Positions 25,671 to 52,716 of a stretch of 64,000 bases of DNA are shown here, in pieces (within the stretch, counting starts at the first letter, position 1; each line of letters opens with the position of its first letter). Both the position numbers and the translations under genes were made by a program. The notes beneath the pieces were generated by a model. It had not been told where the DNA came from, made no database searches, and saw nothing but the letters and a program-made list of their open reading frames with translations. The DNA is from Trichoplax adhaerens (Eukaryota; Animalia; Placozoa): contig NW_002060966.1 in NCBI RefSeq assembly GCF_000150275.1, positions 529,922-593,921 on the forward strand, in the 5' to 3' direction.

Positions 25671-27826
25671 ATGAAGGTTGTCTTATTAACATTATTGTTC
25701 TTTATTACCATTGCCACGACCGTTCAGGGTGAGTTTTATAATTAAATAATCTCAATTAACCATTTTCTTTATTTTATTCTCAGTTACTCTAAGTTACAAC
25801 TAATTAAAGACCGACAACCTTTGTATAGCGTTAGGACTAGCGTCATTTATTTATGGACTTTTCTCTCAGTCCGTTGTAGCTATGTTCTGTTTAATTTAAT
25901 CATCGGTGTTTGAGTAACCTTTTATTTCAATTCTTAATAGCAAGTTGCAATATCACACTAACATCAAGGAGTGGCAGTTTTAAAAGCCCATATTATCCTC
26001 AAATGTATAATCGCACATATTGTTACTACTCCATTTTCGTTCCCAGTGGCTACATAATTCGATTACATTGGCAGACATTTGATGTTGGCACACCTCAGAC
26101 TTTCAGCAAATGTCATGGCGATAAAGTAACAGTTTATAATGGATACAAAAGACCAGGTACTAAGAAAGTGGAGCTGTGTGGTCAAAAGAAAAAGTCTTTT
26201 TCTTCAACATCCAATCGTCTTACGGTTGTGTTCGATGGACGCACTAGTCGCAAATATCGAGGCTTCTATGCAGTTTATGATACAAGTAAGTCTTCCTCTC
26301 TTCATCATCAACAAAATTAATAGAAATTATACTTAACAATTTTAATTAAAACAAGGTAACACAAATTATACTATTTGTTCTGTCCTTGTAGTAACCCCTA
26401 TCGTAATGAGCAGCTACTAATTAAACTTATTCCAACAATTTAACTATATAGCTGTTATTTAGAATTTGACTTTCTTTGCAAGTAAAACTTTTTGGTATGA
26501 TATTCGGCTTGGATTTTAATTGTAATAGAATTAATGCGTACTTTAGATACCCCGATGGCACGGTATGATTTTAAAATGATAGATTATTTTTTAAATTAGC
26601 AGCCAACCAATTTACTATATATTGGCCAACTGCAGCAGGACAAATTCATTATTAACTACCGTACCTACGCAAAGATTTCATTGAAGCACAAATCTAACAG
26701 CACGTATTAATTTCGATGGATCTTAATCTCAAAGAGCAAATACAATTGATCGTTCTTGGACCATCTTTAGAGAACGACATTGCATCTAATACCTGATAGT
26801 AACAATTAAATTGATGCCTTACTTTCCTATTTGATAGATTAATATCAAACTATAAAATCTTCCTGCTAACGACTGAGGGTCGACATTAAAGCCGAGTATT
26901 AAATAACAGTAACTTGCAATTATGGCTAAATTTTAAGATCGATGTCTAGCTTGTACTTATGTAGTAGGATAGATAGAATAACAAGGTAGCTTCCATTAAT
27001 AATAATATAGAAATGCTAAGTTGTAATAGCATTTGCTTATATTACACAAACTAGATTTATATGGCTGCAATGCATGCTGAACTTGTTGATTGAATAGACA
27101 GAAATAGCTAAACTCTTAATTATTATCCGGCTAAAGAATTTTATCGCTTATATTAAGCTTTACCATCAATCACCGGCACTCCGAAGAGACCTGTTACTCC
27201 TTCTCGTGTGAGTACCTCCTCTTATATCTCCAAGACAGTAATTTTCAAAAATTCAACTTGTACCCGCTATCAATGGTACCATAATACACCACAAGGAAAA
27301 GTCCCCTACAAAACAACGATTACTTGTACGAAAGGTAAATTTTATTCTTTGCTTCTTAACTTAGTCAATCACAAGGACGCATTCAATTGCTATTCAAAGA
27401 TACAATTCTGCAGTGACTACAGGATTAAAATTGGCTAAAATTTCCTGGTACTGTTACGGTTAATTGGATTAAATTATAAATTCTAGTTTTTCAAAATCAA
27501 TTTTCTCAGTATACTTATAATCAAGCTTACTCAGTTAGTAAAAACTTTTAAATGTTACGTATAGCTACAGGATAAGCAATTAGTACCTTTGATAAACTTG
27601 AATAACATTCAGACCGATGATATTTCAATCAGAATATGGACGATTTAAAGTAATAACAGTCATCGTACGATATAGTTGCACCCTTTACAACGTTTTGTTC
27701 GTCGTTTTAAGTACAAATTTGTTACCTGCGCGAGTTGCATCTTCAGCAAATTTCCATACAAAGCAAAACTATACTCAGATTCTACTGGTTGCGATATTAG
27801 TGTTAACGCTTTCTTACTATTTGTAA
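25671..27826 (+). CDS. CUB gene 2: signal peptide-CUB-Pro/Thr stalk-novel Cys module-GPI-like tail; exons 25671-25728, 25941-26285, 27158-27334, 27747 (or 27735)-27826
   Basis: MKVVLLTLLFFITIATTVQA; CNITLTSRSGSFKSPYYP...YRGFYAVY; terminal hydrophobic ILLVAILVLTLSYYL* with no cytoplasmic tail; phase-1 introns. Confidence 0.8.
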
Positions 27827-28429
27827 TTATTTTTGTGCTACATGATTTCTATTATAGGTGTGAGCGTGGTTACCATTATTGCTGTATCGGTTAGTATTTT
27901 CATTTGTGCAATAATTGCAGGAATTTTTTACACTATTAAAAGACGACGAGGACCTCATTTTGTTAGGCTATAAAGCGAGTGGACCACATCAGCACATAAA
28001 ATTTGCTGGAATACACAACATCCTTATATACAGTTGTTTCCAATTAGCGGTAACAATTACGAATATGATTATGTTATTAGTGCAAAAGATGCGCCGGTTT
28101 TAGTGTCGTAGGAAACTACAGCGATCGCAGCATTTCGTTCTTATTCGGAGTCTTGTTAATTAATAATAGATGTTATTCGTAATTCTCGTTTACAATCTTC
28201 GGCTTCTACAGTATACATACTAAGAATATAAGTATTGAAAGCAATGTAATAGCGATTGTCTATTAACTTGAAGTACTAGTCTGCATTTGGGTAGGTTTTA
28301 GATAATGAAAATTCAGAAATTACTGTATCCCGTAGAATTTCGTTCTAATGAGTTTACTAAGTTTAGTAAGTGGATCGATGTTATTCATAACTATTAATTG
28401 CGATCTTTGGATTTGTAAACAAAGTTAGA

Positions 28430-29750
28430 ATACAAGTAGTTAAAACAAGACAATTCGCAACAGCAGAGATTTATGTTAACGAAAACCATGCAATAAACTA
28501 TTTTATTCCAAATCGTCTGTGATTAGAATTTGTTGGAGAATTCCAAAAAAGCAGATTTATTACAACATATTTGATAAATATCGATAGCAATATGTTTTAT
28601 ATCTCCAAAATTAGCGTAGAACTATGCAAACCGAAGCGTACACGTAGTTAAAGTAATGCAAGAGAGGTTTTTGTGAGCGAAAAACCAATAATAAACTGCT
28701 TGCATTCAGTATCGTTAGTGATTAAAATTTGTTGAAGAATGCAAAAGAAGCAGATTTATGGCTCCTTATTTAGACAATATCAATAGCAATAGTAATCATA
28801 ACCTCAAAATCAGTCTAGAACATTGTGAACTTAAGGGATACAAATAGTTAAAGCAACGCAACAGATATTATCTTCTTTGTAGTGGAGATTATAACCTGCT
28901 GTTAGTGATGTTTGTTTACGATAGACTTGAAAATACAGTAACCACAGAATTTCCGTCTTATACTTAGTCTAGTACGTGAATCGATGTTGATCATAACTTT
29001 TATATGTGATTTGCAGCTTTTAAACAAGGTAAGTAGATGACCAGTTATAGCAACGCTGCAGAAATTGTCCCCTTGCATTTGATAGTCTGCAACTGGAGAA
29101 GTTTATATTAACGAGAATCCCGTAATAAACCATTTATTTCGAATTATTTGTGATTTCAATTTGTTGGAGATTCCAAAGAAGCACATTCATAACACCTCGT
29201 TTAGGCAATATAAACAGCTATATGCTTAACATCATAATAATCAGTCTTGAACATTGTAAGTATTAAGAATTGCTCCTTGGCGAGTAATATGCATTAATAC
29301 ATGTACTTCTCAACTCTCATGTGAAGACAAGAAGTGATTTTACTGAAGTTGTACCCGACTTTATATAACATATCTACGCATACCATAGCCGTATGATACT
29401 CCCACATTGTACAGTAATCTATTCCATAAAGATAAATGCATCATAAACATCATAAAGTCATATTACAATTTCAACGATTGCTGGTAACATAGCTTTATTG
29501 CTTGTTACTCTACACATTTTACAACTACTGACGTAACAGCAAGTGAAAGCAAATAAGTAATTAAAGCGACAAAATAGAGATTGTCTTCTTTGTGCTTGGA
29601 ATGATAGTCTGCAAATGGAAAGGTTCTTGTCAACAAGTAGGCTGTAACAAAGTGTTTTATTCTGAATTGTTTGCGATTAGAATTTGTTGAAAAATTCCGA
29701 AGAAGCAGATTTACATTGCCCCATTTGGTTAATACTAATAGTAATGTGTT
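28430..29750. repeat. Degenerate local repeat, about 4 copies
   Basis: Variants of gattagaatttgttggagaattccaaa.aagcagattta at ~28521, ~28720, ~29152, ~29676. Confidence 0.7.
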
Positions 29751-30439
29751 TCATAGCTTTTTCTCTCCCAAATTTTGAATAATCTCAAACAAGTGTATCA
29801 CTTATAGTAACGTAACCGAACAATAATAGTAGCCCATTAATTTGCTTATCTACATTAATGCCCATGCCATTCGATAAAATGAATTATACAAGCTCCAGAG
29901 TATGATTACAATTAACGCGGCTATCACAGATATACAACTTTCATCTTGCAGTAGTCAGCAATCCATCAAGAATGATATATGCACAAATGCATGCATGAAT
30001 GGAATGATCGCTGCTATTTCACAGGCATGCAACTATTAAAGTATTAGTTAAACAATCCATAACCATCATCAAATAGAGCTTCCTTGGAATGATAACAATT
30101 CTATCCCCAATAATTATGACAAGCATGATGAATTGATGATGTCAGTGAGAGAATGCGCAGAATAATCTTTTCATCAAATAGAAAAAATAAATCTGTGGTT
30201 GGCATTCTAGTGGATATATGATCTTTGTTAAAGAGCTCAACAGGACTTAATTTTAGCGATTCATATGTTAATTAATGCTTGCCACATTGATCAGTAACGT
30301 CGTTATTATTACCCTATTGACAGTTATTAACGAAGGCTATACAGTAGATTCATTAAAGGAAAAGAAAAATTGCCGTCATTCTATTCAAGAAGCTCTCTAT
30401 TAAGGCTAGGAAGGATAGTTAACGGAACTTTTTATCTAA

Positions 30440-31650
30440 GTTATCAGGAAATTTCGTGATAGACATACGATTTGGTAAGTTGAAATTCTCTTACTCGGTT
30501 TACGGATTCCTTCTCAGTTATCATGATGCAACAATGAATAGTGGAAGATATTGTCCACGGCAACGATTGTGCCTTTGCTTATCAATTCGAGCAGTATCTT
30601 TAATCATTGAGCATAACTTTTAGCGCTCTTTGGGAAAGTAAAAATTATTTTTAAGTCACAATTGAAACAATATCTTTCAAAATCTTCCTTAGCTACTTAA
30701 AGTAAGATCATGATGTAGTTTACTAACTAGTAAGGCTATCCTAGTAAAAGATAGAGTCCTTAGGATCGAACATGCTGGATGCTTGTCAACTCTAGTATCT
30801 TTAATTAGGCATTGAATATAAAACTTTAGCACTCCTTTAGGAAAGTGAAGTTTATTTTCAACTCAAGCTAAAAATATCATCTTTCAGTGTCGTTCTTAGC
30901 TACTAAAAATAAGACCATAAAGCAGTTCACTATCTCATGAAGCTATCAGATTTTAGTCTGGCAAATGATTTCTAAAATTTTAATGTATAGGTTACGGTTA
31001 ATATACGTAAGTTTTTTAGGTGTAGAATATCATGGACAGAAGTCAACAGGTCGCTCGCTTTACATCATCCTTCGTCTAATTACTTGCCATATACGTCTAA
31101 TAGACTGTAATTTCCACCATAAAATTAGTTTATTGCAATGAGTTAAGTCTTAATCATGACAACAAATTAACTTTCGTATCAAACTTACTGATCACTGCCA
31201 ATTTCTATAGGTTTTTTATGAAAGAATCGTAGATTTAAACCAATCAAGGAGACAGCTTCGCTTATATTTCACAGCTAGTAAAATCTTATCAGGTTCCTTT
31301 ACCATTAGTCATTCTACGTCAAACGATGCCTTAAATGATATATTACTTTGAAGAAGGTTTACAAAGGTTCATAAGTACACCTTTTAGGCTGTAATTTAAG
31401 ACAAAGATAGATAGTGTCCTCAAATATAACCTTTACAGTTTCTATTGCAAAGGATTCTGATGGATGGCAAGTCAAATTTTGAGAAAAATATGTTCGAAAT
31501 GGCATCTTATAATGCCTTTTCTCATACTCAGTAAAAGCATATATGCATATGCTTAAACATCTTATACTTAGAGGCTCAGCAAGATACAACTTAAGATAGT
31601 AAAAGTAGATATCGATAACAGTAGCGCAAATTGTATCAGAAATAGTTTGT
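30440..31650 (+). repeat. Upstream/5'-UTR-intron region of CUB gene 3, paralogous to 46140-46800 and 48225-49300
   Basis: gtctggcaaatgatttctaaaattttaatgtataggttacggttaatatacg at 30956 and 46216; acagtttctattgcaaagga at ~31435, ~46691, ~49079; shared probable donor gtaagt at 30475 and 48252. Confidence 0.8.
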
Positions 31651-31880
31651 GGCTAGTATGCCGATTTTGACTGATTATGATAGGCTTAATAAATATCCAT
31701 AAACTTCTCACTATACCAGTAATAACGTAATAAGCAAAGAAAGAACTAAAAAAAGACGCTATATTTTTATTTACTCTTATTCCTTCCATACCATTTTATC
31801 GATATCGAACTTAAAATCAAATTGTTTCTCTAAGAGTTGGATTCTAACTTTTCCCTAGAATACAAAAAACCCTTTCCGCC

Positions 31881-34800
31881 ATGAAATTAATTTCAATTGC
31901 TATCATAACTGCCATCATGATGGCCTGTGTCGACGGTAAGAAGTTAATTACAAGAAATAATGCTCTTATTACATTGCAATACTTAATTTTATTTTTAGTC
32001 TATAGGATGATAAACTGAAATTATGGCTTACAATCGTTATAATACACTATCTATTTTTTATTTGATTGATGATGGTAGCTAGTTGCAATTTCAAGTTGAC
32101 ATCGAACTCCGGATCCTTCCATAGCCCAAATTATCCAAATAATTATGCTAGTGGAAAGTGTGAATATAAAATTACAGTTCCTAAAGGTAAAGCGGTCCAG
32201 TTAACCTGGAAAACTTTCAATGTTGGTCCTTCCAAGGTGAATAAGAAGTGTCCTGGAGATACAGTTTCGGTCTATGATGGCACTAAGGACAAAAATAATG
32301 GCATTGACATTCTGTGTGGGCAAGAAATTCAATCAATTACATCGAGTGGCGGTAACCTGACTATCATTTTAGATAGTAAAAGCGACAAAAAATATAAAGG
32401 TTTTTCAGCTTCCTATACTACAAGTACGTGAATTCTTCTAATATTTATATATATAGATTAAAACCTACTAACAGATATAATTTAATTCTCAAGCCTTGTA
32501 AAACTTCTACATAACATGTATAATGCATACATATACCGCACATATTTATTGCAAATACAGTATATGGTACATTGCCTATAAAGTAACGTATGACATATAC
32601 AGTTTATACCTAAATTTTTCTAATATTATATTGATAGAAACCTACTAATACGTATAATTTCATTAAAAACCTTATATGCAGCGTAAATCGGCGACTGAAT
32701 TTCTTTTATTCTCTTTAAAATCACAGTTGACGTAGCCTGTAATGGTATGACTTTATCGACCGATTCAGGATATATTGCCTCTCCCAATTATCCTAACCCA
32801 TATCCAATTAATTCAAATTGTTTGTATAAAATACAACTGCCACCTAGGAAAGTTATAGCTATTGGCTGGTTAGGCTTTGATATTCCTTTTGGCCAACCAT
32901 CAAATTGTCAAGACTACGTGGAAGTTTATGATAAAGAACCCACAGAAAGCAGTAAAGTTTATCGCTATTGTGACCCTGGATATTATCCACCCCAATTTAC
33001 CTCTAGCAGCAATGTAGCCTATATAAAATTTGTTAGTTCCAGTACCAAAAACAAGAATCACAAAGGTTTTATTGCTTATTATCGATCAGGTGTGTTAAGC
33101 AAACACAGTGCCTATATTCATAATAGTTAGTCTTTCGAAGTATATCAGGCGTGATTGCTCATTAAAAGCTAATGGAAAAGAAATTTAGCTGATGTATAGA
33201 TAATTGCAAATATACTCGTTTTATTTAATAACCTTGTAATCTACCGTCTATTAAAATTAGGTACCAGACAAACCTGCAATATCAATTATGGTACTGCGAC
33301 AGGAGTCGTTACAGTTCCTAATGTACCATCACTAGTTGGTCAAAATTTGGACTGTAAAATTAACATCAACGCGAAATTGTCTGATATAATTAATTTTAAA
33401 TGGATGGAATTTGGCTCTGATTTATTCTCTAAGCCCGACTCTTGTCAAAATTTTATCGAAATTTACGGTGGTGACATGACTGCATCTAATTTAGTCTCGA
33501 AGAAATGTAATTCTAAAACAGGTTCTAGCGTCAGCATGAATGGTACAACGGCTATTGTGCATTATAAAATCAAAAATTATAACACCAAAAAAAACTTTCG
33601 CTTAGTTTATCAAGGAGGTTAGCCATATTATTTATACGTAAATAATAAATATTAATTAAATATAATTGGCCTCCAGTGTATATTTTTAAAATAATGGAAA
33701 GCACTTGATTAATATTTATTAATTTACTAAATTTATAATATATCAAGTGTTATGTCTATGATATTTTAAGATGATTCACTTAAATCTATTACTAACCAGA
33801 TTGTAAATAATAAAATCTATTTCATATATGAATCGTGCGTGGAATTCTTAAACGACTCGATTCTGTAGAAACTTGCTCTGATATTGTATAATTCAGATTA
33901 ATTAAATCATTTTTTTAGTGCTAGATAATACTATTAAATCCCATTCAATTGCTATACTGTCCCTTTTAGTAATACTCAGTTATTAGTATATTAGCAAATT
34001 GCTTGCTTATGATTACTTGGTTTTCTTCTTCTTTTAGTAACAACTGGAGTTTTACATAAAGAAATTATATTCAAAAATGCTACATGTGAAGCTATTGAAT
34101 GGTATTACAATACACCATTTGGCAAAGTTATTTCTAGAACTTCGTTCTCTTGCAGCTCAGGTAATTTTATTAGCATTTATAGTAGCATTTCAATTAATTT
34201 AAGAATGATATTTGATCATATTTCACCTAAATCACTTATTCAAAGGATAATCGTAACTAGGCATGCTATCTAGGGTTTTAGTAATCGATTAATTAGTAAT
34301 TGCAAAACTAATATAACATCCTCGATATTATAGATTTAATTAATTAAAATCAAATCTTTATTCTATTACAGCTACATAAGATAATTATTTAAAAATTTAC
34401 TTTACTACTTAGATCGAAATAAATTACATCTTTATTATTTATACTAAAATAAAGAGCATACCATCGTACGGTAACAACGTTAAATATTGCTGAAACACAT
34501 GGTTTATAATTTACTACTTCTTCGAGTAAACGGATATAGACCAATCTCACTATTTTATTATTGCATAGAAAGCTAATATATCCATTTGAACTTCTTATCT
34601 TATATTGATATCAATATCATTTGCAGATTAATACACTCGTACTGTTGTTATTTCGATATATCGCAATACGATTCCTTTATAAAACATACTCATGATATGG
34701 CGATCGAAATTGCAATAGCAAATTTACAATAGCTTAGAATTCATTTATATGATAGCAGCAACTGATTGTTTACGGATGGTATATTGTAAATGAATTTATG

Positions 34801-34995
34801 TTTAATTCAGCATGTATTTACTAACGACTTATTGTCATATTAGGGCATGGCATCAAAGGTACTCTACCACTTTGGGCCTTTGTCCTAATTATTATCGGTA
34901 GCTGTGCTGTACTGATAGGACTTTCCATTGGCGTGGGATGTTGCATCTATAAGGCTGTCAAAAGAAGACGAAGTACACCATACAGACAAATATAA
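31881..34995 (+). CDS. CUB gene 3: signal peptide-3xCUB-novel Cys module-TM-tail ending YRQI; exons 31881-31935, 32079-32423, 32727-33089, 33261-33617, 34038-34160, 34844-34995
   Basis: MKLISIAIITAIMMACVDA; SPNYPNNY, SPNYPNPYPINSNCLYKI, CQDYVEVYD; TM LPLWAFVLIIIGSCAVLIGLSIGVGCCIY; phase-1 introns. Confidence 0.9.
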
Positions 34996-39609: not shown

Positions 39610-42600
39610 ATGCAATCTACACTGCTACTGCTATTGCTTTCAGTTCTTTTAACTAACGTTAATGGTAAGAAAATTCATTGACTATGCATTAGTTTACAGT
39701 ATGGAACAATTTTTTGTACATAGAAAATGCACTAATTGAAAATTTGAATTTTATATTTTAATAGCCGGATGCAATGTTAGTTTTTATGGTCCCAGTAGCA
39801 TAGCAGAAAGTCCTCATTATCCTGACATGTATGATGTCGGAAATTGTTATTACTTCATTAAAGTCCCGTTAGGAAAAGCTTTAGCTCTGTTCTGGCTCCA
39901 TTTCAATGTTGGAACTTCCAAAGAAGATAATCAATGTCGGGGAGATTCGGTTACAGTCTACGACGGTACCATGTTCTCACCTCTGCGCCGATGGACATTC
40001 TGTGGCAACGAAGAAGTAAGAAATCTAACATCGACATCGAACATGATGACTCTATGGTTTAAAAGCAATTCGACTCAGCAATATGATGGTTTTCAAGTGC
40101 AATATGATTCATGTAAGGATAGAAAAACAGTGATTACATGATGATAGCGTCTTGATCTACATGATCTATCGGATGATATAGTTAGCATGAAAGAGTGATT
40201 TGCATTAAACTAATTCTTGACGAAAAGATTATTTTTCCGAAACTTTCATTATCCTTTTGAATACGATTTCAGAATTTAGATGCTATAGATATAAATTACT
40301 TTCGCGGAAAAGGTTATCTACCCAATCAGAACAGCAATGAAAGATCGATACTACAACCTTTCGATGAATAGCTTAAGTAGATTATAAACAAGAATACAGA
40401 CGATTTACTGCAAATAGCTATAGAAATGATCTTCTGTTCCAAAATTGATAATACAACTTTAAAATAGTAAGATCAAAACGGTTTATAAACAAGTAGCTTC
40501 ACAGTTGCTACTGGTAGTTTCTTTGAATGGATGGATTTCGTTAATGCAATATCCGAAACTCTGGCAAAATTAATGAGCCACTAATACGAATCAGTTTAAT
40601 GTAGTTATTTTTGGAAATTAAATTTATTTAATGCATTATCATGATCAACCGGAGTCCTCCAACATTCACCTATTAATTTACTATTGAAGTAACAGCCGTC
40701 AATCTTGCAATTTATAAGGCAATATACACTTGATACTAGTATGAGAATAACTTGATAGAAAACGACTTTTATGCTACTAGACTCAAAAGCTGTAACATCA
40801 GATAGCACTAAACAGACCAATTATCATCAAAAGTAATTGATTGATATAATTTTACCTGTGCTTAATATTATTATCTGTTAGCATGCTATCAAATATCAGT
40901 TCAACTAATAAGCCTGACGTAGATCAGTGTTTAATTAAATCAATTGACCAGGGAAAAAAGCTGTTCGCTATTTGGCTAAAGAAAAGTTATGAAATTGTAA
41001 TAGGGTTATTCGGCTAATATCCTTGTACTTTTTAATTAAATATTGCAGTCGATGTTCCATGCGTAACTCAGACTTATCAAGGCAATCTTGGAATAATTAA
41101 GAGTCCCCATTTTCCCCAGCCTTTTCTAGTTCCATCCTGTAGCATTTACAGAATACAAGTTCCAGCTGGTCGCGTAATAAAATTAACCTGGAATAAATTT
41201 AGTATCAGCCCAAATGTTCCCGTTTCTTCGTGCTTGAATTACATCGAATTATATGATCAATGGCTAAAATCAGAAAATAAAATTTATAAATTTTGTTCTG
41301 GCGACAAGCTACCACCATCATTTACATCTAGTAGCAACACTGTCTACCTGACATTCACAGCGTCTACGATCAGCTCGCTAAATTCAGGATTCGAAGGTGT
41401 CTATCGCTCAAGTAAGTATTTGCATCATCAAGAAAATAGATATACATTCAGATTTTCTGTTTATCTATTACTATGTAGACTATAAGCATGAAATCTGTTT
41501 CATTTCTATGCATATGTCAAAATTAACAGATATAAGCACTCAGCAGCATTAATAAGTAAACTCATGACTTTATGAATGACACTGTAAAGTGATGGAGTTG
41601 AACTTTAAACTTTTAGTGATGAATTAAATCAGCACATATAGATTGCACATTAACTCAAAAAGACTATTTTTAACACTAATCATTCTTTCTCCAACTTTAT
41701 TCTAGTTACTCGAGATGTGTGCAATATTAAGAGTGAAACTCCAACTGGAGCTATTACCGTTCCTAATAATCCATCGTATCTTCACCTAGACCTCGACTGC
41801 TTTGTAACCATCAATATTATTGATATTGACTATATTATCCTTAGATGGGTAGAATTTGGTCCCCAACTATTTGACAATCCTTCTTTATGCAAAAATTATA
41901 TTGCTATTTATAATGGTCTAATCAATTCCACTGATTTGATTATGTCATTGAAAATGTGTCAAGAAGGAAACGCTACTACGTTGCCAGTAAAATCAAAGAA
42001 TTTGATCAATGTACGCTATCGTGTTTGGGATTATAATCACTTTAAGAACTTTCGATTCTTTTATATAGGGGGTAAGAAGCAAATAATATGAGAGTATAGT
42101 GAAAGATCATTCAACTTTTACTTGCCGATACTTTATTCATATTGGCATCGTAATATTGCACTCGAGTGAACGAAAACTACGGTTTATTCTCGTGTTGTAT
42201 AACTTATTTTAGAATCTTCATCATAGCCTTGGCATCAATTAGTGACATCGCCAAGAAATTTTCTGATGCAATAGCTTTTGTTAGTCTCAGTTTCGTAATT
42301 TATCGAACTACTTAATTCTTAAATAGCAGCTACAATCTTAAGAAAATGACATACAGTAAATTTATAGATATCTCAGCCTTAGCAATATTGATGCTCTAAA
42401 GTAAAAAATGTTGACAAAACGTTAGTGAGTTGCGATATTGCATATGATCTTAACTTCACCCATGTTATTAAAAGATAGAGTAATGTTTTACCAAATTTAA
42501 CTGTAGTTAATTCGAATTAAGCATAGCTTTCTTTACCGTAGTGTGATACTGGTTTATCTTTGGCCACAATCTTCTATCATTAGGAATGAGAAATTTTTAG

Positions 42601-43589
42601 ATTTTAGAGTAGTTATAGCGTACCTCGCAGTTCATTTATTACGTCTTTGCAGCCACCGTCTCGGCTCAATTATAAACTAGGGATCGATAATTCTCTGTAA
42701 TATTACATTTAGTAAACTTTATGATACAATAATGCTCTGAACTAGTTCAATACAAGGGTTATAGATAAATATCTGTATATGTTGTAATTATGAAAATTTT
42801 CTTTGAGTCAGGCATAGTATCGTAGTAAATACATTCATGATAATAAAGCATAAGCATAACCTCGCCAATTTTTAATTTAAAGTCTCTTCCCAACAACTAC
42901 AAAAGAAAATTAAATTTTCCAATGCCAGCTGTGAAGATATTGAATGGTATTATGAAGCGCCTTTTGGAAATGTAGTTGTTGAATCAACATTATCTTGTAA
43001 AGGTAAAAGATATCGTATTATTAATATCTATTCTAAGGCAATTCCTGCCATCAATTGACTACAATCTTGCTCTAGACATCTTAAATTATAAATTAAGCAA
43101 AAAATTGTCGATCATATCCCATTTCTTCATAATAAGAATATATTTACATTCATTTACTGTATACCTTATCTATATTTCAATTAGAAATAGTAAATTTGAT
43201 TTACTTACTTGCAAACGATAAAGTATAATGCATGGCTGTACACTCTAGGAATATTCGTTTCTATCCAAATATACTTACAGTAACTAAATAATAAATATTA
43301 ATTTGACATAATTACTTTATCGAAGAGCAACGATTTATAATTTTTATAGCTTGGTTTGTAGGTGATTATATGCCATTTATTAGTAGCTTTGATCTACGAA
43401 TATGATTGCTTACCTCACGTGTCTTTCCTGTCTCCTTTTCATACAGAACCTGCTTCTAAGCTAGCCACTTGGGTCATGATTGTTATTTTTTGCGGGGTAG
43501 GCTTAGCTTCGACTGTGCTTATTATTGTTTCTGGATGTTTGCTGGCCCGTTATTTGCAAAGAAGTAGACAACGTTACCAAAACTTGTAA
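39610..43589 (+). CDS. CUB gene 4: signal peptide-3xCUB-novel Cys module-TM-tail ending YQNL; exons 39610-39664, 39765-40112, 41049-41411, 41706-42071, 42883-43002, 43447-43589
   Basis: MQSTLLLLLLSVLLTNVNA; three CUB exons colinear with gene 3; TM LATWVMIVIFCGVGLASTVLIIVSGCLLA; phase-1 introns. Confidence 0.9.
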
Positions 43590-45230
43590 CATGTAGCATA
43601 TCTTGGTATCGAATTACAAAGTAAATCAGATGTCGTAATCTATAAACCAGAAATTTTAAAGTATAACACGATTGTAGCTTTTTTAAATACAAATATTGCA
43701 AGAAATATACTCTTATGGATTCATATTTTCTTTTCCTCTGTTGTAAATGTTATATTACTAGTATTACAAAATTATATAATTTTTTTCGTATTGCAACTGT
43801 ATCACTTTGTTACAGTGTTAAATACTGTATTACAGTACAAATATCTATGTTAGGATAATTCTATTAGACTATCCTTATTTAGTTAACTTCTAATTTGGAT
43901 ATACTGTGTTTTAATATAGCACTGACTTTTTATCACAGTGATACTTATACACATACTGAAATTAATAGTTATAATAGGGAATGCAAATCATCTACTTACA
44001 GTTCCAATCATTGTGATTGTAATTTACTTATGGTAGATTGTAAATTATCATGGAAATGTTCCGTGATAGGACATATCGTAATCTGACTATTCTGTATTAG
44101 TCATTACATGTCTATATTCGTAAATACCGTTGTCTGCATTAAGGGAGCAGTAGCTAAACTTAATGTCTAATTCAGTAAATGATTCCGAGGTTAATTGTAT
44201 TAACTATGACTCATGAACTATTGAGGAATAGTATATAAATGCAGTATATCGTGAAATAAAGAGAATTCTCCAACTTAGTGTTTAACGTAAAATACGAGGC
44301 GTTTAAGTCTTTGTGTAGTCTGCTAGTAGAGCAAAAGTGTTTGTGATAGTGCAGATATCGTTCCTTGATACGTGGTTCAAGGAATTGACTTATTGATCGT
44401 ATATTGAGTTATCTTGTTGCAAAGCTGTTTTGTGACACACTTGCATAAAAGATTACGGATATGCCATTTTATATATTTGCAATATAAAAGTGCAAATATC
44501 AAATGAAACTAAACACAACAACCATCATCATAGTTAAGCAGCGTCAATACCTAGTTGTCAGTGAATTTGATAGAAAAATCATAAGACGCACTAGAAGTAC
44601 TTTTATAATTCTTTCTTTTCCACTACATCTCAATTACCATGTTTTCAGGTCATAATACTTCAAAAGAGACATAGTATTCTCAGATATAGCTAACCTATTA
44701 TGACTTTACGTACGAGATAATAAAGCTTGCAAGAGCTGCTGCTATCAGTTTATCATTTTATTAGACATAGAAATACTGTATGCTTTAAAATTGATACCAA
44801 ATGTATTTTCTGTCAAAATGTAAATTATTTGCTTATTACCCTGGAAAATTGGATACTATGATTATAATGAAATTTTTGTAATCAATTTTCTTTTTTCTCT
44901 ATTGTTAATCCTTCAGTTGTAAAAATAATTAAGAGGTGATCTACATCAAACATTAAAAATTGCTCCCGTTATAGTTTTTGCAGCTCATGTTCAATGTATT
45001 ATATTAAGTATATTACATTTAGATTATTGCAACGATTTTCCGTTTAATCTACTGTCTACTCATTACCCCAATGGATATTCAAAGTATCGTAATCAGGTCC
45101 CTCTATATAAAGAATTATTGTCATAATTTTGATTTATACTATATGGCTCTCAATGTGTGCAATCCTCTATCGCTATTAAATTGTATTCTTCAATATCCAT
45201 TATTTTGTTGGTTAATACTTACTCTATATA

Positions 45231-45557
45231 AATGATCTACTTGCATACTCAAATCTATTGGTTACTCAATTTCGATCATGCAAGTATTGGCCACATGAAT
45301 TTCATGGTGGGTAGTAAACTTTGAAGTACATAAAATTTCTGATGCTCTATCTTGTACAATTTTAGTAGCAGTTTTAATATGATAACAGCCTCTAAAAATG
45401 ATCTACTTGTATACTCATATCTATTGGTTACTCAATTTCGATCATGCAAGTATTGGCCACATGAATTTCATGGTGAGTAGTAGACCTTGGAGTACATGAA
45501 ATTTCTGACGCTCTATCTCGTACAACTTTAGTAGTAGTTTTAATAGGATAACAGCCA
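45231..45557. repeat. Recent direct tandem duplication (~166 bp x2)
   Basis: aaatgatctacttg...tctattggttactcaatttcgatcatgcaagtattggccacatgaatttcatggtg...gataacagcc at 45231 and ~45397. Confidence 0.9.
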
Positions 45558-45629
45558 CCTAGGCTATTTGCTATCTTCGGATATCCGCTCTAATATAGAA
45601 AGATTACGCAGTTAAGTAGCGTTGATAAA

Positions 45630-46130
45630 GTATCTGTTGCAGCGCAATCAATCATCATCTCTTTGTTTACAGCTACTTTAAGAGCTTGACACTGTTGTTC
45701 TATAGTAAAGAAACTGATATCAAGTCATTTAAAGCTTAGAGATCCCCTTGAAAGACATTTAAAATTCATCAAATAATACTTGCACTAGATTAAAGCCATC
45801 AATTGTGTGTTTCTGCAATTCTGCAGTATCTGTTGCAGCGCAATCCATCAACCTTCCCATGTTTACATCAACTTTAAGAGCTTGATACTGTTGTTCTATA
45901 GTAAAGAAACCAATATCAAGTCTTATAGAGCTTAGTTCCCCTCAAAAGACATTTAAAATTCATCGAATACCAGTTGTACTAGACTAAAGCCATGAATAGG
46001 GCATTCCTGCAATTCTGCAGTAGCGCAATCCATCAACCTCCCATGTCTACATCCGCTTTAAGAGCTTGATACCGTTGTTCTATAGTATAGAAACCAATAT
46101 CAAGTCATATAAAGCTTAGAGATCCCCTTA
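45630..46130. repeat. ~190 bp satellite, about 3 copies; same family as 54030-55320
   Basis: gcgcaatc.atca...tttaagagcttga.ac.gttgttctatagta.agaaac..atatcaagtc three times. Confidence 0.9.
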
Positions 46131-46139
46131 AGAAAAATA

Positions 46140-46995
46140 ATTTTTCAGTGTCTGTCTTAGCTACTAAAATAAGACCGTGAAATAGCTTAATAACTGATAA
46201 AGCTATTAGATTTCAGTCTGGCAAATGATTTCTAAAATTTTAATGTATAGGTTACGGTTAATATACGCAAGTTTATTGAGTAGAATATCATGGACAAAAT
46301 CAACAGGTCGCTATGCGTCATCCTTGGTCTAATCACATGCAAAACATGTCTAACGGACTGTAATCTCTACCGTAACACTAAATTACTGCGATAAGTTAAT
46401 TCTTAATCTTGACAACAAATTAACTATCGTATCGAACTTAGTGATCACTGCCAAAATCTATAGGTATTTTATGAAAGAATCGTAGAAATTTTGAACTAAG
46501 CAAGGAGACAGCTTTACTTATATTTCTTAGCTAGTAAAATCTTATCCGGTTCCTTTACCATCAGTCATTCTACGCCAAACGATCCCTTAAATGATACAAT
46601 ACTTTGAAGAAAGTTTATAAAGGTTCATAAATATACCTTCTAGGCTGCAATTTAAGACAAAGATAGATAGTGTCCTCAAATATAACCTTTACAGTTTCTA
46701 TTGCAAAGGATTCTCACAGATGGCTACGTCAAATTTTACTGAAATACGTTCAAAATGGCGTCTTCTAACGCCTTTTTCATGCTCATTAAGGCATATATAT
46801 ATATATGTCAACGGCAATTTGCGAAATCCGGCATTTTGCAAAATAACTGAAATCCTTTAGGCATTTTGCAAAATGCCTAATCCCAATTCAACCATGTATT
46901 TCAAACGATCCTAAAATGGTAATAACAATAAGACATCTGTACATTTCTTGGATTTAATAGATAAATTTTAAAATGCGTATATATGCAGTGAACTC
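46140..46995 (+). pseudogene. Remnant of a CUB gene 3-like locus with the entire coding region deleted
   Basis: 46140-46800 matches the gene 3 upstream region (~30880-31545) and ~46885-46995 matches the gene 3 downstream region (~35271-35385). About 80 bp of unrelated palindromic sequence lies between them. Confidence 0.7.
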
Positions 46996-48224
46996 AGCTA
47001 ATCATAAGACGTGGTAATATTGTTGCAGTAGATAGAAACTACTTAAGTCAATTGCAAATGCTATCTGATAGTGGTATCCTTATCTTTAGTAGGTTATGCC
47101 ATATTTAAATAAATAAGCAAATAGTGATATCTAAGAAAAAAAGTATGCTTACCGCTAATAAGCTGCGACGATGATATATTCACGAATGGCCAGACTATAG
47201 TTATAAAATGTATTATAATGCTGCACTAGTATCAATCAAGTTCATGATCCAGAATTTATCACGAGATCATAGGCACTAATATTTACGCATTTAGTCCTCT
47301 GGTTTATAATGCATACTTCAGTTTCCCATTAGAATCTACTGTAGTTTAATCCTTTAATCTTTTCGACTTAAATTTCAGTAATTAATATATAGGCTAATTA
47401 GCTAATAGGTTTATAGTTAATTTTTGTACTTTTAGGGTAATATTAATTTTAGATAAATTGCCTAATACAATTTAGCAATACATTTTTAGAAACGATGACT
47501 ATAGACTGACTTAATTAACAATTTTAAAATATGTACTTCGGAAAAGGATCTGTCTTAACTAAGACTTGCAATAGTAGTTAAATATTGCAGCTTAGCTTTA
47601 CTTAAAACGTTAATTCAAATTTGCAGGAAGGGTTAATTTACTTCATGTGGGTTTAATAGCGGCCAAAAATAATGTAGTTATGAAAGTAAATGACCATTTC
47701 CACCCTAAATGATTATATGACATGCGCATAATGGCAAAATGTGCTATGTCATTTAAATTCAATTCTGCAAGGATAAAAAAGACGAAAACTTAAATTTAGA
47801 GCTAGGATTAAAATAAATAAAGACTAAACTATTGCATAGCAACCAGATATATAAGCTATATTTAATTAATTATATTGATATTTGCATACCAAAAGCTGAT
47901 ATTTTGTTTATCGGTGCTATGCAACTAATCTGGGTGAGGTTAATTCTATTTCTAGCCATCAATAGAAGAAATATAGCTATGGTCAGCATTAATCAGTTTG
48001 GTACTCTTTGTTTGCAAATTCAGAGGACTTTATTTCATCTGTTGATATATTAATTTATGCTTGCCACATTTGTCCGCTATAGCTCTCGTTGTTATTCTAT
48101 TCAATGTTGTTAACAAAGGTTTATACGTTAGATTAAGTAAAAAAGAAAAGTCATTTACTTTCTATTCAGAAGCTTTCTACGTCTAGCAGAAATAGCTAAC
48201 GAAACTTGTTATTCCAGTCGTCAG

Positions 48225-49300
48225 AAAATTTCGTGAAAGAAATACGATTTAGTAAGTTAAAATTCTTTTATTTGGTTGAAGGATTCCTTTTAGGTTATCA
48301 TGATACAACAGTCTATAGTAAAAGATAGGGTTCACGGCATCGATTGTATCTCGTACTTATTAACTCGAGCAATATCATCGTGCTTTGACGGTTAAATTTT
48401 AGCACTTTTAGGGAGATTAAAGGCTATCATTAAGTCATAATTGAAATAATATCTTTCAATATCTCCTTTAGTCACTAAAAATGAAGCCATAAAGTAGTAT
48501 ACAAGCTGGTGAAGCTATATTAGTAGAAGATAGAGCCCTTAGAATCGATTATGCCTGGTGCTTATTAACTCTAGTATCTGTAAGCATTAAACGTAAAATT
48601 TTCACATTCGTTTGGGTAAAATGGAGTTTATTTTGAAGTCGTGGCTGAAAGAATGTCTTCCAAAGATTCTTTTAGTCACTGAAAATTAAGACCCTGAAGT
48701 AGTTCACTTACTGGTAAAGCTATTTAATCCCAGTTTTGCAAATGATTATTAAATTTTAATGCATAGGTAGCTTACGGTTAACATATAAGAGTTTTGTTAA
48801 TAGAAGATAATGGATACAAATCATTCGTTTGCTATGCATTAGCCATGGATAAATCACTTACTAGGCACTTGTAAGAAACTGCAGTGGTTTCTATTAAAAA
48901 ATAAACCTATTGCATTGAATTGATTCTTAATTTCCATAAGGAATCAACTATTGTATCGATTTTAAAAATCGCTACCAATTTCAACAAGTAATTTATAAAG
49001 AAATCGCAGATTTAAATTACGTATAGGCTATACCATTCTTTAAGATAGGCATGATAGTATCTAGACATAGAACCTTGTACAGTTTCTATTGCAAAGGACT
49101 TCTTATAAATGCCTATGTCAAATTGTACAGAACAGCGTTTAAAATGATGAGTTCTAACGCCAATGCTCACTGACAGTATATACGCATATTCCTAAACATC
49201 TAATGCATTATAGCCCAGTAAATGTGTAATGTCATATAACAGAACCATTTATCGATAATAATAATTGTGCAAACCGCAACAGAATAATTTGTATGTCAAC
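48225..49300 (+). repeat. Upstream/5'-UTR-intron region of CUB gene 5, a diverged paralogue of 30440-31650
   Basis: aaatttcgtga.aga.atacgattt.gtaagtt.aaattct, ttatcatgat.caaca, aactctagtatct and gcaaatgatt..taaattttaatg.ataggt are shared in the same order. Confidence 0.75.
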
Positions 49301-50599
49301 TTTGACTACTGATTTATATAACTGTTATGAAATGAATTTGAGGTTAAAGTGAATTTACCGTTTAGATAAACTTCTTGTAATCAATCGCTGCGAGATACCT
49401 TGGCGATCAGGTTCTACTTTTTAATAATCATCGATACTAACATTTTTATGGTAATCGTCATCGATTTTTAAATATGACATACTATAATGCGATCCTCTTA
49501 TATAACGACATGAAAGCGTTTAGATTGCTATATTTTTTTTTGGGGGGGGGCAATAAACTAAACGAAATCATACCAAAATTGAAATCAAGTAGAGTACTAG
49601 CGTTATATCAACAGTAATAATTATTCCAGTATTATTTTTAATTTACGATAATATAGTTACCACATCGTAAAGATTATTAAAATCTCTTAATAAATGTCGA
49701 GATAAAATTATTGTATAATAAATATCATGATAGCGACTAGATACAGTACTATGTTTAATGTAGATACTATTTTCGTTCACAACATCCAATAATAAATTTT
49801 ATTTCAGGAAGTAAATATCAAAATTTCATAAATAGGGAACCTTTAGTACCATGCTAGGATAACTTCTAGCAAAATATTAGAAATTTTCTTTTTCTCAATT
49901 CGGGTCCATATCTTTCCATTATGAGTTTCTACCATTTTATGATCCGTAGTTCGTTAAGTGATCAAAAGATAATGAAAATTATTTAACTAAGTAAAAATCA
50001 GCTAATATTGTTTATTTGAGCATAACGTTTAGATTTGAAAGGCGCTGAAGCATACGTTTATGCTTACTTGCATGGGCATCGTAGAAATTACATAAAGGGA
50101 TTAATAAATGTGTATAATATTAACTAAATTTTTATCAAATTTAGCCTTAGAGGGCCATCTTCAAAATTAAGACTGTCATTCGACTTTGGCTAGTCTGCTA
50201 ATATTCTTCGAGGGGTGCAGCACAATTATTAAATAGAACAAGGATTGTTTAGCAATTTTATCAAATTAATTACGGTACGATATATCATACTCATTGCACA
50301 AGGAATTTATTCGTCCATGGAATGTTATCGGCAGTGATCACATTTTGATTAATTAATCTGAATTTGATCGGTTGTTTCCCAAAAATTCAAGAATAAAGTA
50401 CAGTTGATAAAAACCACGACACGGAAGTATATCTTACCAGCTATTGTTTATTTAGCAATTGTTTAGTCAGCGTTATTCAACTTGCCATAGAAATAAGACA
50501 TAATACTTTTTAATTGATACATATGCTCAATGATGACGATATATTTATTTCTGTGACATTAATCGAATTTTTGACGGTCGCGTATTCAGGCTAATCAAC

Positions 50600-52716
50600 A
50601 TGGCAATGAATTTACTCTTCTTCATTTTAATACTGTCAGCTTTACTTTGGACATCATGTAGTAAGTTTAAAGATTGGCTTAGCCAATGCAATGTTTTTGT
50701 TAATTTCTAATAATATAAATATTCAGTCTTACTAGCTTAATAGATCTTACGATGAATCTAACTTCTTTTGCCCAATCAGATTCAGTAACACTTACAACTA
50801 TGCCTCCAGGCGGTAAGTAAATTGTGAATTTTGGGATTATTACTTGTATAGCAAAACACTAATTCTTTCAATTACAGTATTTATTCTTAGTTCTTCGTGC
50901 TAACATGAATTATTCCTTACGTAGCCTTATCTACAAATTCAAGTAATTTGCATGCGCGCTTGGTAGATACTAACGCCACGTGTGCATCCTATGAATGGTA
51001 TCGTAACACATCAAATGGCCAGGTTGTAGCTCAGCAAACCTCTCACTGTTATTCAAGTAAGCAAAAATTTCATCAAGATGCAGCCAATACTTCAATTAAT
51101 AAATAGTTGTAGCTGAAATCGACATCAGTTGATATGATGAAACATAAGTCGACGCTTAGCTATTAAGGTCCATGACAAGGCTTAAATTATGAAAATGAAA
51201 TGTAATACTCGTACTTTTTCGTGATACTTATTACAACTATTATACAAGTAGATGATTAATATATTGCAACAAAGATATAGTAAAAATCAAAATTTGTTAG
51301 GTATAGAGATTAAGATTCATTATACCAGTTGATTGATATGAGGATATATAAACGGGAGTAAGAATAGCTTTAAGATATTGCGTTTTATAGTATCTAGCCT
51401 GCCTGTTCTATAGTAGGATCGTATAATGATATTTTTAGCAGCATCTAATATATCTATTCTACCTTAAATCTGTGAACTACATTCGCTCTGTGAGTGTTAC
51501 ATAGTTTCATAGATTTTGGAAAATAGAGCTATTTCAGTTAAAATTAAAAATCTTATTTAATTTATTTTCATACTTATTTCATTTGATAACTGTTGATGTT
51601 AACAATTAAAGAATAGGATACACTTTATGAAATTATGAAACTGTATGCAGATAATTGAGCTAGCTATGATAGAACATTCTTATTTTTAGAAAATATCATT
51701 GATAGCTATTGCTAAATCGAAAATTTTAATATGCAACATGTAGAAATTTTCCACTATTAAATGTTTAATACATTGACGTATTTCAGATCGCTGTAATGTC
51801 ACATTCCACCAGTCATCGGGCACCTTTACTAGTCCTTACTATCCACTTAGATATATGCCAGCTTTCTGCACCTATACTATCAACGCACAAAGTGGCAACA
51901 CTATCACCATTAACTGGCAAAAATTTAATGTTGGAGTAGCGGCATTATTTGGAAGCTGCTTACCTGATAGTGTTACGGTTTATGACCAATCAACTGTGTC
52001 TCCATTAAGTAAAAGTGTACTATGCGGTAACATGAGTCAAACCAGTTCATTCACGTCTAAATCAAATAAAATTATTATTGTTTTCAAAAGCATATCAAAT
52101 CGCCATTTTAATGGCTTTATGGCCAACTTTAAGACCAATGGTCTGGCTTCACATCAAAATCATCACTCGCTAGCTACTGTTATCCCAAGTAAGAATTGCA
52201 TGGCGATACTTTAATTGCAAATATCGACTTTTATTCTACAATTCAAAGATATCAATGAATACTGAAATGAATTAAGTTGATACTATAAATTCATTCTATT
52301 TTGATTTATATCCTGATAATAAGCAACTGGTGGTCAAATCTATACTCAGGTTAAAAGTATCAATAAAACCTGTAAATCTATTCAATGGTATTTTAATACC
52401 CCCCATGGAAAGCATATAGTTCGGATTTTACTGGAATGTGTTAAATGTAAGAAAATCAGGCTTAAAATATTGATTTTATATAATATAAAAATACGTAGCT
52501 TGATAATATATTTTTCAGCTATTGCTGTTGTTTCTTTGCTAATGTTGGATGAATAATTTTCCTTTACTTGCTCTAGTTACCGTTACCTTGCCAACATGGG
52601 CCATAGTAATGATTGGCATTGGCATTGGTTTTGTGGCAATAACAATATTTTGCTGCTTCTGTGCCAACTGCAGTATGATTATCAAAGGAAAGTGTCTAGG
52701 TTATAGAAAGATGTAG
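50600..52716 (+). CDS. CUB gene 5: signal peptide-linker-novel Cys module-CUB-novel Cys module-TM-tail ending GYRKM; exons 50600-50660, 50780-50812, 50925-51056, 51787-52188, 52324-52446, 52577-52716
   Basis: MAMNLLFFILILSALLWTSC; CNVTFHQSSGTFTSPYYP...FNGFMANF; TM LPTWAIVMIGIGIGFVAITIFCCFC; all junctions phase-1 GT-AG. Confidence 0.87.

What the first reader, a model, noticed from the sequence alone, without database searches (positions are those of the whole stretch)
27158..52446. Unrecognised ~40-aa exon-shuffled disulfide module (C-x21-C, WY/TPxG) in five copies across four CUB genes
Seen in sequence: five phase 1-1 exons encode KNSTCTRYQWYHNTPQGKVPYKTTITC (27158-27334), KNATCEAIEWYYNTPFGKVISRTSFSC (34038-34160), SNASCEDIEWYYEAPFGNVVVESTLSC (42883-43002), TNATCASYEWYRNTSNGQVVAQQTSHC (50925-51056) and INKTCKSIQWYFNTPHGKHIVRILLEC (52324-52446). 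All have exactly 21 residues between the two Cys, an invariant WY and G, and an N-glycosylation sequon directly before the first Cys. Only one of the five appears in the ORF track. The module is usually membrane-proximal, but gene 5 also has it N-terminal to the CUB domain and gene 1 lacks it, so it behaves as an independently mobile unit. Inference: a disulfide-closed, glycosylated beta-hairpin or small three-stranded sheet with a TPxG turn, possibly for oligomerisation or as a stalk. I do not recognise it as any named domain (not EGF, LDLa, Sushi, SEA or TSP1).
Basis: partly seen in the sequence, partly recalled or inferred. Interest (0 to 1): 0.85.

Follow-up and report, generated by a model that had tools for sequence, protein, structure and literature searches.

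The report
Placozoan-only mini beta-sheet stalk module
Five short exons in one cluster of Trichoplax CUB-receptor genes encode a real, expressed, conserved 40-residue cysteine-stapled three-stranded beta-sheet that sits just above the membrane and matches no described domain, but it occurs only in this one gene family, so it is a modest lineage-specific novelty.

Summary
All five peptides lie at the stated coordinates on the + strand. Each sits in an AG/GT-bounded exon whose length is a multiple of three. Invariant features are N-x-S/T-C, C-x21-C, WY and G (5 observed against 0.005 in shuffles). Public gene models carry the other three.

The genome is Trichoplax adhaerens. A diverged placozoan scaffold keeps the exon (72% aa identity, pN 0.16 against pS 0.75) while its introns no longer align.

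AlphaFold2 predicts a three-stranded antiparallel sheet, alone (pLDDT 91) and inside a full-length protein (about 86). It ends four residues before the transmembrane helix.

Pfam, PDB sequences, ESM Atlas, Foldseek, VIA-align and a profile search of 1.84 billion proteins give no family match. The apparent bacterial Ig_7 hits are sums of weak per-repeat scores.

The "independently mobile, exon-shuffled" claim is overstated. The genome has at least 96 CUB exon matches, yet the module occurs only in this tandem cluster plus one haplotig-like duplicate.

Best reading: a placozoan-restricted, glycosylated, disulfide-stapled juxtamembrane stalk of small, probably endocytic, CUB receptors. Other notes of this scan cover the same stretch, not other DNA.

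The parts
27158..27334 (+). Module exon of gene 2 (177 nt). An S/T/P-rich linker of about 18 residues is followed by the 40-residue module.
   Evidence: Peptide at 27247-27327. AG/GT bounds and length divisible by 3. Present in public model P0005.
34038..34160 (+). Module exon of gene 3 (123 nt).
   Evidence: Present in public model P0001 between the third CUB exon and the TM exon. AF2 model pLDDT 91.
42883..43002 (+). Module exon of gene 4 (120 nt).
   Evidence: Present in P0003 (Trichoplax sp. H2 protein). Orthologous exon in L009 is 76.7% nt and 72% aa identical. Three strands in the full-length AF2 model.
50925..51056 (+). N-terminal module exon of gene 5 (132 nt), upstream of the CUB exon.
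   Evidence: RNA contigs join it to 51787 (X6, X7, X8) and to the upstream micro-exon (X6).
52324..52446 (+). Juxtamembrane module exon of gene 5 (123 nt).
   Evidence: RNA contigs join 52188>52324 and 52446>52577 in three runs.
51787..52188 (+). CUB exon of gene 5, flanked by the two modules.
   Evidence: Pfam CUB E 2.1e-16. Exon bounds from RNA contigs.
52577..52713 (+). TM and short cytoplasmic tail exon of gene 5, ending in Y-R-K-M.
   Evidence: RNA joint 52446>52577. Translation.
50600..50660 (+). Signal-peptide exon of gene 5 (coding part).
   Evidence: P0004 residues 1-20 map here. RNA joint 50660>50780.
50780..50812 (+). 33-nt micro-exon of gene 5, between the signal peptide and the N-terminal module.
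   Evidence: RNA joints 50660>50780 (X6, X8) and 50811/2>50924/5 (X6).
25937..26284 (+). CUB exon of gene 2.
   Evidence: The genome-wide Pfam CUB search matches this exon (C1391:555867-556199).
27827..27970 (+). TM exon of gene 2 (open frame).
   Evidence: Hydrophobic stretch followed by basic residues in the translation. Splice bounds not verified.
32075..33616 (+). Three CUB exons of gene 3 (32075-32422, 32726-33088, 33263-33616).
   Evidence: Pfam CUB: 4.5e-21 for the second and 4e-07 for the third. The first matches.
34846..34992 (+). TM and tail exon of gene 3, ending in Y-R-Q-I.
39761..42070 (+). Three CUB exons of gene 4 (39761-40111, 41048-41410, 41708-42070).
43449..43586 (+). TM and tail exon of gene 4, ending in Y-Q-N-L.
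   Evidence: TM helix from residue 287 in the AF2 model of P0003.
20972..23329 (+). Gene 1 of the cluster: two CUB exons (20972-21313, 22469-22810) and a TM exon (23108-23329), without the module.
   Evidence: No module hit here.

Best explanation
The five exons encode a placozoan-restricted extracellular mini-domain of about 38-40 residues. It is not a member of any described family. It folds as a three-stranded antiparallel beta-meander. Strand 1 comes from the preceding domain. A tight turn carries the N-glycosylation sequon (N13-x-S/T15) and is followed directly by Cys16. Strands 2 and 3 form a long hairpin around the N-T-P-x-G turn, and this hairpin is closed at its open end by the Cys16-Cys38 disulfide. 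With an odd number of strands, the N- and C-termini lie at opposite ends of the sheet. The C-terminal Cys is only about 4-5 residues from the transmembrane helix. The module therefore stands on the membrane as a short, rigid, glycan-capped, disulfide-stapled pedestal. It holds the one to three CUB ligand-binding domains of these small type I receptors away from the bilayer. Three of the receptors end in an extreme C-terminal Y-x-x-hydrophobic motif, which suggests endocytic or lysosomal traffic; a protease-resistant stalk would be useful there. The module spread by tandem duplication of the whole gene. One extra exon-level event placed a second copy before the CUB exon of gene 5. Shown: existence, splicing (g5), conservation under purifying selection, restriction to this cluster, absence of matches to known families. 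Predicted: the three-strand fold. Inferred: the disulfide, glycosylation, stalk function and trafficking.
For: Peptides, invariants and exon bounds. Chance expectation 0.005 against 5 observed. Splicing of both g5 copies in three RNA studies. Public models contain the g2 to g4 copies. Organism: P0004 is TRIADDRAFT_61599 of Trichoplax adhaerens and P0003 is a Trichoplax sp. H2 protein. Conservation: on the diverged scaffold L009 only exons align, and the module exon has the highest nt identity of the four aligned segments (76.7%; the others are 69-76%). Its aa identity is 72%, with pN 0.16 against a saturated pS of 0.75. Fold: AF2 on 6 sequences gives pLDDT 91 with strands at 5-12, 16-25 and 28-38. 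The same three strands (250-256, 260-269, 272-282) appear at pLDDT about 86 inside full-length P0003, with the TM helix starting at 287. Strand positions show alternating hydrophobic and polar columns. No known family. Restriction to the cluster: against at least 96 CUB exon matches elsewhere. Tails ending in YRQI, YQNL and YRKM.
Against: The alignment has only six sequences, and high AF2 confidence for a short hairpin-rich peptide is not proof of an autonomous fold. A single-layer three-stranded sheet has no core of its own, and both faces carry conserved hydrophobic or aromatic residues. It may therefore need a partner: another copy, the CUB domain or the glycan. The homodimer test returned no verdict. 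Disulfide, glycan occupancy and function are not measured. Splicing of the g2 to g4 copies rests on public gene models, not on reads laid here. A 40-position profile has little power to detect remote homologues, and no profile-profile search against Pfam or PDB70 was available.
Confidence: 0.6

Rival explanations
1. The module is primarily a pairing element. Its hydrophobic sheet face packs against a second copy. That would give homodimers of g2, g3 and g4 receptors, and an intramolecular clamp between the N-terminal and juxtamembrane copies around the CUB domain in g5. The sheet would then be half of a small beta-sandwich rather than a free-standing stalk.
For: Conserved hydrophobic and aromatic columns on the sheet (L/I5, I/V9, I/Y19, W21, Y22, V30, position 36) have no core to bury them. 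g5 carries exactly two copies. A single-layer sheet is predicted.
Against: No positive evidence. The homodimer job gave score 0.00, which counts as 'no answer' and not as evidence either way. The two g5 copies are the most divergent pair (25% identity).
Confidence: 0.15
2. The module is a strongly diverged piece of a known domain. One candidate is the 'I-Q-W-Y ... G-G' strand-turn-strand half of the bacterial Ig-like domain Ig_7 (PF19081). The other is the first Cys-loop of a CUB domain.
For: The module profile hits Bacteroidota-type repeat proteins with whole-protein E down to 2.9e-18, and Pfam calls these Ig_7. The core I-E/Q-W-Y-x5-G-x-V/L-I/L has the same spacing in both. hhalign of the module against Ig_7 repeats gives probability 44%, P 2.4e-4.
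Against: Those E-values are sums over 5 to 23 near-identical repeats. The best single repeat scores 13.6 bits, with independent E above 3e3 for the library. The hhalign target was chosen because it had already matched, so its P-value is post hoc. The module's Cys16 aligns to a non-Cys column, and Ig_7 is 84 residues with Cys at both ends. Pfam Ig_7 does not hit any module copy even at E up to 10. For CUB, hhalign probability is 0.9% over 8 columns; the C1-C2 spacing is 24 residues with a G-x-F-x-S-P-x-Y-P motif that the module lacks.
Confidence: 0.08
3. The segment is not an autonomous fold. It is a linker whose strands add to the sheet of the neighbouring CUB domain, or it is ordered only in that context.
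For: It is very small, has one disulfide and no core, and in g2 to g4 it always follows a CUB exon.
Against: In g5 the N-terminal copy follows only a signal peptide and a micro-exon. AF2 gives the same three strands alone and in context. The module is as conserved as the CUB exons.
Confidence: 0.1

Closest known systems
Small disulfide-bonded extracellular modules encoded by symmetrical phase 1-1 exons that accompany CUB domains in animal receptors (LDL-receptor class A in NETO and LRP12, Sushi in SEZ6 and CSMD, EGF in cubilin and tolloid). This comparison rests on my own knowledge of these families.
   Same: About 40 residues, one exon, phase 1-1, extracellular, disulfide-stabilised, placed between CUB domains and the membrane anchor.
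   Different: Only two Cys (those families have 4 to 6). No Pfam match to any of them. All-beta three-strand meander. Restricted to one placozoan gene cluster.
Ig_7, 'Ig-like domain CHU_C associated' (PF19081), of Bacteroidota surface repeat proteins
   Same: Shares a strand-turn-strand motif with identical spacing (I-E/Q-W-Y, five residues, G, then two aliphatic residues) in a T/S/N-rich context.
   Different: Ig_7 is 84 residues, its Cys lie elsewhere, and single-repeat scores are insignificant. There is no reciprocal Pfam hit. This is a motif-level resemblance, not membership.
Single-layer beta-sheet stalk domains (G5 and E repeats of staphylococcal SasG, IgA1-protease G5)
   Same: Flat three-stranded sheets without a conventional core that build rigid stalks holding functional domains off a cell surface (their role from my own knowledge). 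They appear among the structural neighbours (6oh1 Z 3.7, 5dbl Z 3.2).
   Different: Z is below 5, which is only a common arrangement by the tool's own guidance. There is no sequence similarity. They are bacterial, without a disulfide or glycan, and occur in long tandem arrays rather than as a single copy.
LAMP-type short cytoplasmic tails ending in Y-x-x-hydrophobic (context for the host proteins, not for the module)
   Same: g3, g4, g5 and the L009 orthologue end in YRQI, YQNL, YRKM and YQHL after a short basic tail.
   Different: The luminal or extracellular parts are unrelated (CUB plus module). Trafficking is not tested.

Membership tests
CUB domain (PF00431) | About 110 residues with four conserved Cys, matching the Pfam model above 21.4 bits. 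| tested here: not met
   No CUB hit for any module copy at E up to 10. hhalign against the window's ten CUB exons gives probability 0.9%. The flanking exons do meet it.
Ig_7 (PF19081) | An 84-residue Ig-like repeat matching the Pfam model above 27.3 bits, with Cys near both ends. | tested here: not met
   No Pfam hit. Reverse per-repeat scores are at most 13.6 bits. Cys columns do not align.
   Only two Cys per module. No Pfam family at E up to 10, apart from a single spurious Lactococcin hit.
WW domain (another 35-40 residue three-stranded sheet) | Two Trp about 20-22 residues apart with a C-terminal Pro; intracellular; Pfam match. | tested here: not met
   One Trp only. No Pfam hit. The module is extracellular, lying between a signal peptide and a TM helix.
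G5 / SasG E single-layer sheet domains | A structural match clearly above background. | tested here: inconclusive
   Z 3.2-3.7 among 1209 chains with Z of 2 or more, and none at Z 5 or more.
Any solved structure or large Atlas cluster | A sequence or fold match. | tested here: not met
   PDB hmmsearch best E is 1.1 over 18 residues. Foldseek has no hit at E of 0.001 or below. Atlas features give no usable hit, and the shape hits are unrelated families.

The most novel reading that the evidence does not exclude
The module is a new, autonomously folding extracellular domain family that arose within Placozoa. It would work as an obligatory pairing element: homodimerising the single-copy receptors, and clamping the CUB domain intramolecularly in gene 5. 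That would make it a lineage-born dimerisation domain controlling a family of endocytic CUB receptors in an animal that feeds by external digestion and uptake.
Probability: 0.15. Interest if true: 0.45.

Novelty: new variant of a known kind. Interest (0 to 1): 0.3.

Why it matters
It is a clean, small example of a lineage-born extracellular module. It has one exon in symmetrical phase, one disulfide and one glycan site. It is confidently predicted as a three-stranded sheet and is under purifying selection in at least two placozoan lineages, yet it is absent from Pfam and from 1.84 billion protein cluster representatives.

It could be added to domain databases, and it would improve Trichoplax gene models: the public model of gene 5 lacks its second module and its membrane anchor. 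It also gives a tractable 40-residue peptide for studying single-layer beta-sheet stability.

The reach is limited. The module occurs in one tandem gene cluster of one phylum, its function is inferred, and it does not open a long-standing question.

Tried and rejected
(1) Bacterial Ig_7 homology. The 18 non-placozoan hits of the profile search are repeat proteins whose E-values come from summing weak repeats. I rejected them as evidence of homology.

(2) Origin from the CUB N-terminus. hhalign probability is 0.9%. Rejected.

(3) Extra genomic copies. Two weak profile hits on C1413 (E 0.005 and 0.1) have stops and no CUB context. Three extra pattern hits are low-complexity or chance, against 2 in the reversed-pattern control. 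The C1122 copy is a near-identical duplicate of g4 on a small contig that runs into N.

I added the conserved E/Q codon. Only 4 carry the peptide motif in frame, and the best scores 13.4 bits against 52-84 bits for true copies. These are chance matches, so the scan is uninformative.

(6) ESM Atlas by features gave no usable hit. Atlas by shape, Foldseek PDB and VIA-align wide gave only generic three-strand matches.

(7) The complex prediction homodimer job returned 'no answer'. It is not evidence for or against binding.

(8) The search for homologous proteins with P0003 and P0004 found only themselves plus P0024, the L009 gene, so the alignment could not be deepened.

(9) A literature search for Trichoplax with CUB domain found nothing on this cluster.

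All searches and folds used single exons by reference or unaltered public models. The intramolecular pairing of the two g5 copies was therefore not modelled.


Full report
**Observation**

The window is G000:C1391:529922-593921 of a 105.6 Mb, 1414-contig genome with 32% G+C. One protein encoded here, P0004, is named TRIADDRAFT_61599 of Trichoplax adhaerens. Another, P0003, comes from Trichoplax sp. H2. The organism is therefore a placozoan.

Each exon starts after AG and ends before GT. The lengths are 177, 123, 120, 132 and 123 nt, all multiples of three, and the frame offsets fit phase 1-1.

The alignment has six invariant positions: N13, C16, W21, Y22, G28 and C38. There are 21 residues between the Cys, and an N-x-S/T sequon directly before Cys16. 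The motif occurs 5 times in the window, against 0.005 expected from shuffles.

**Expression and gene structure**

Open frames and Pfam scans show five tandem type I genes on the + strand:

| Gene | Architecture |
|---|---|
| g1 | CUB-CUB-TM (no module) |
| g2 | CUB-module-TM |
| g3 | CUB-CUB-CUB-module-TM |
| g4 | CUB-CUB-CUB-module-TM |
| g5 | signal peptide, micro-exon, module-CUB-module-TM |

I laid contigs of four runs on 50400-52900.
- Runs X6, X7 and X8 come from three studies. All three contain the joints 51056>51787, 52188>52324 and 52446>52577, each GT..AG.
- X6 and X8 join 50660>50780, and X6 joins 50811/2>50924/5.
- A 33-nt micro-exon (50780-50812) precedes the first one.

For g2 to g4 I have no reads. 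Public models P0005, P0001 and P0003 contain the module peptides between the neighbouring exons. Everything was searched exon by exon by reference, or with unaltered public models.

**Distribution**

A profile of the five copies searched against the whole genome finds the five copies and one copy on contig C1122. It also finds two weak hits (E 0.005 and 0.1) that contain stops and have no CUB context.

A DNA pattern encoding the invariants finds the same six copies, plus three low-complexity or chance hits against 2 in the control. C1122 repeats g4's third CUB exon and module almost identically and then runs into N. I read it as a haplotig-like duplicate.

The genome has at least 96 CUB exon matches at many loci. 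The module is therefore not a general companion of CUB. It belongs to this one tandem family. Pairwise identity among the paralogous copies is 25-49%, and the two g5 copies are the least alike at 25%. The duplications are old. Only the g5 arrangement needs an exon-level event. "Exon-shuffled, independently mobile" is an overstatement.

**Conservation**

The profile search of 1.84 billion cluster representatives returned P0006. Its contig, L009, is a 3.8 kb metagenome scaffold carrying a diverged orthologue of g4: part of a CUB exon, the third CUB exon, the module exon, and a TM/tail exon ending in YQHL.

Between L009 and the window only exons align. The module exon has the highest nucleotide identity of the four aligned segments, at 76.7%. 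Its protein identity is 72%. There are 15 nonsynonymous differences over 93 sites, against 18 synonymous over 24 sites. That gives pN 0.16 and pS 0.75, the latter saturated. This is strong purifying selection.

**Is it a known domain?**

Several searches returned nothing useful.
- Pfam gives nothing for any copy at E up to 10, except one spurious Lactococcin hit.
- A profile search of PDB sequences gives only E 1.1 over 18 residues.
- ESM Atlas features give no usable hit.

In the 1.84-billion search, the hits beyond the placozoan proteins are bacterial repeat proteins that Pfam calls Ig_7, Flg_new, I-set and similar. I re-scored them per repeat.
- The best single repeat reaches 13.6 bits, with independent E above 3e3.
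- The whole-protein E-values (down to 2.9e-18) are sums over many near-identical repeats and do not show homology.
- What they share is a strand-turn-strand motif (I-E/Q-W-Y, five residues, G, two aliphatic residues) with the same spacing.
- hhalign gives 44% probability with P 2.4e-4. The target was chosen post hoc, the Cys do not align, and Ig_7 is twice as long.

Descent from the first Cys-loop of CUB has no support: hhalign probability is 0.9%. A metagenome pattern scan returned only chance matches.

**Fold**

AlphaFold2 on the six-sequence alignment predicts three antiparallel strands (5-12, 16-25, 28-38), with mean pLDDT 91 and pTM 0.58. In the full-length H2 protein P0003 the same three strands appear at 250-256, 260-269 and 272-282. 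Their pLDDT is about 86, the best-predicted part of that model. The TM helix starts at residue 287, four residues after the module.

From the sequence I infer three further points.
- The N-T-P-x-G turn sits midway between the two Cys. Cys16 at the start of strand 2 and Cys38 at the end of strand 3 therefore face each other and can close the hairpin.
- The sequon lies in the strand 1-2 turn, at the membrane end.
- Three strands put the N- and C-termini at opposite ends, so the sheet spans the gap between CUB and membrane.

Hydrophobic and polar columns alternate along the strands.

Foldseek, Atlas shape search and VIA-align give only generic three-strand matches, with best Z 4.7. Single-layer sheet stalk domains (IgA1-protease G5, SasG) appear at Z 3.2-3.7, which is an analogy only.

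**Mechanism**

I read the module as a rigid, disulfide-stapled, glycan-capped pedestal. It holds the CUB domains of small receptors off the membrane. The tails of g3, g4 and g5 end in YRQI, YQNL and YRKM. From general knowledge of Y-x-x-hydrophobic signals, that suggests endocytic or lysosomal traffic.

A rival is that the exposed hydrophobic face pairs with another copy. That would be a dimer in g2 to g4, or an intramolecular clamp in g5. The homodimer job gave no verdict, so this stays open.

**Verdict**

The structural inference is supported by prediction. "No named domain" is supported within the reach of the tools. "Mobile, exon-shuffled" is not supported beyond one family.

This is a new small domain family of a familiar kind, restricted to one placozoan gene cluster. 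Interest is modest.

Noticed in passing
window 51787-52716 (gene 5; public model P0004 = TRIADDRAFT_61599): The public 217-aa model reads through the CUB exon donor at 52188 into the intron and stops there. RNA contigs instead splice 52188>52324, then 52446>52577. The real protein therefore has a second module, a TM helix and a tail ending in YRKM that the public model lacks.
   Followed up: yes
window 50780-50812: A 33-nt micro-exon lies between the signal-peptide exon and the first module exon of gene 5. It is seen in RNA contigs of X6 and X8.
   Followed up: partly
G000:C1122:63-1992 (L003, L010): A small contig duplicates g4's CUB exons and module exon almost identically and then runs into N. 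Its few amino-acid variants match the Trichoplax sp. H2 protein P0003. It looks like an unplaced haplotig rather than a sixth copy.
   Followed up: partly
L009:1-3843 (ENA metagenome scaffold): A 3.8 kb scaffold from a metagenome sample carries a diverged placozoan orthologue of g4: CUB, module, and a TM/tail ending in YQHL. Synonymous sites are saturated relative to the window. Which placozoan lineage it comes from is unknown.
   Followed up: partly
window 34846-34992, 43449-43586, 52577-52713: The short cytoplasmic tails of g3, g4 and g5 end in Y-x-x-hydrophobic at the very C-terminus, like lysosomal membrane proteins. g1 and g2 do not.
   Followed up: partly
window 27827-28108 (gene 2; public model P0005): The public model of g2 leaves the TM exon midway through the hydrophobic stretch and joins a downstream segment. 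The open frame itself runs through a full TM plus a basic tail to a stop at about 27971. The model may be mis-spliced.
   Followed up: no
window 54032-55314; also 45230-45556: A tandem array of a 196-nt unit (6.7 copies, 80% matches) lies downstream of the cluster, and a 166-nt unit occurs twice between g4 and g5. Related ORF-like fragments recur at 45629-45932.
   Followed up: no
window 50400-52900, runs X6 and X10 (organism B): Runs labelled as a different organism lay on gene 5 with several contigs only 95-99% alike. X6 shows the same exon joints, so a close relative expresses the same architecture.
   Followed up: no
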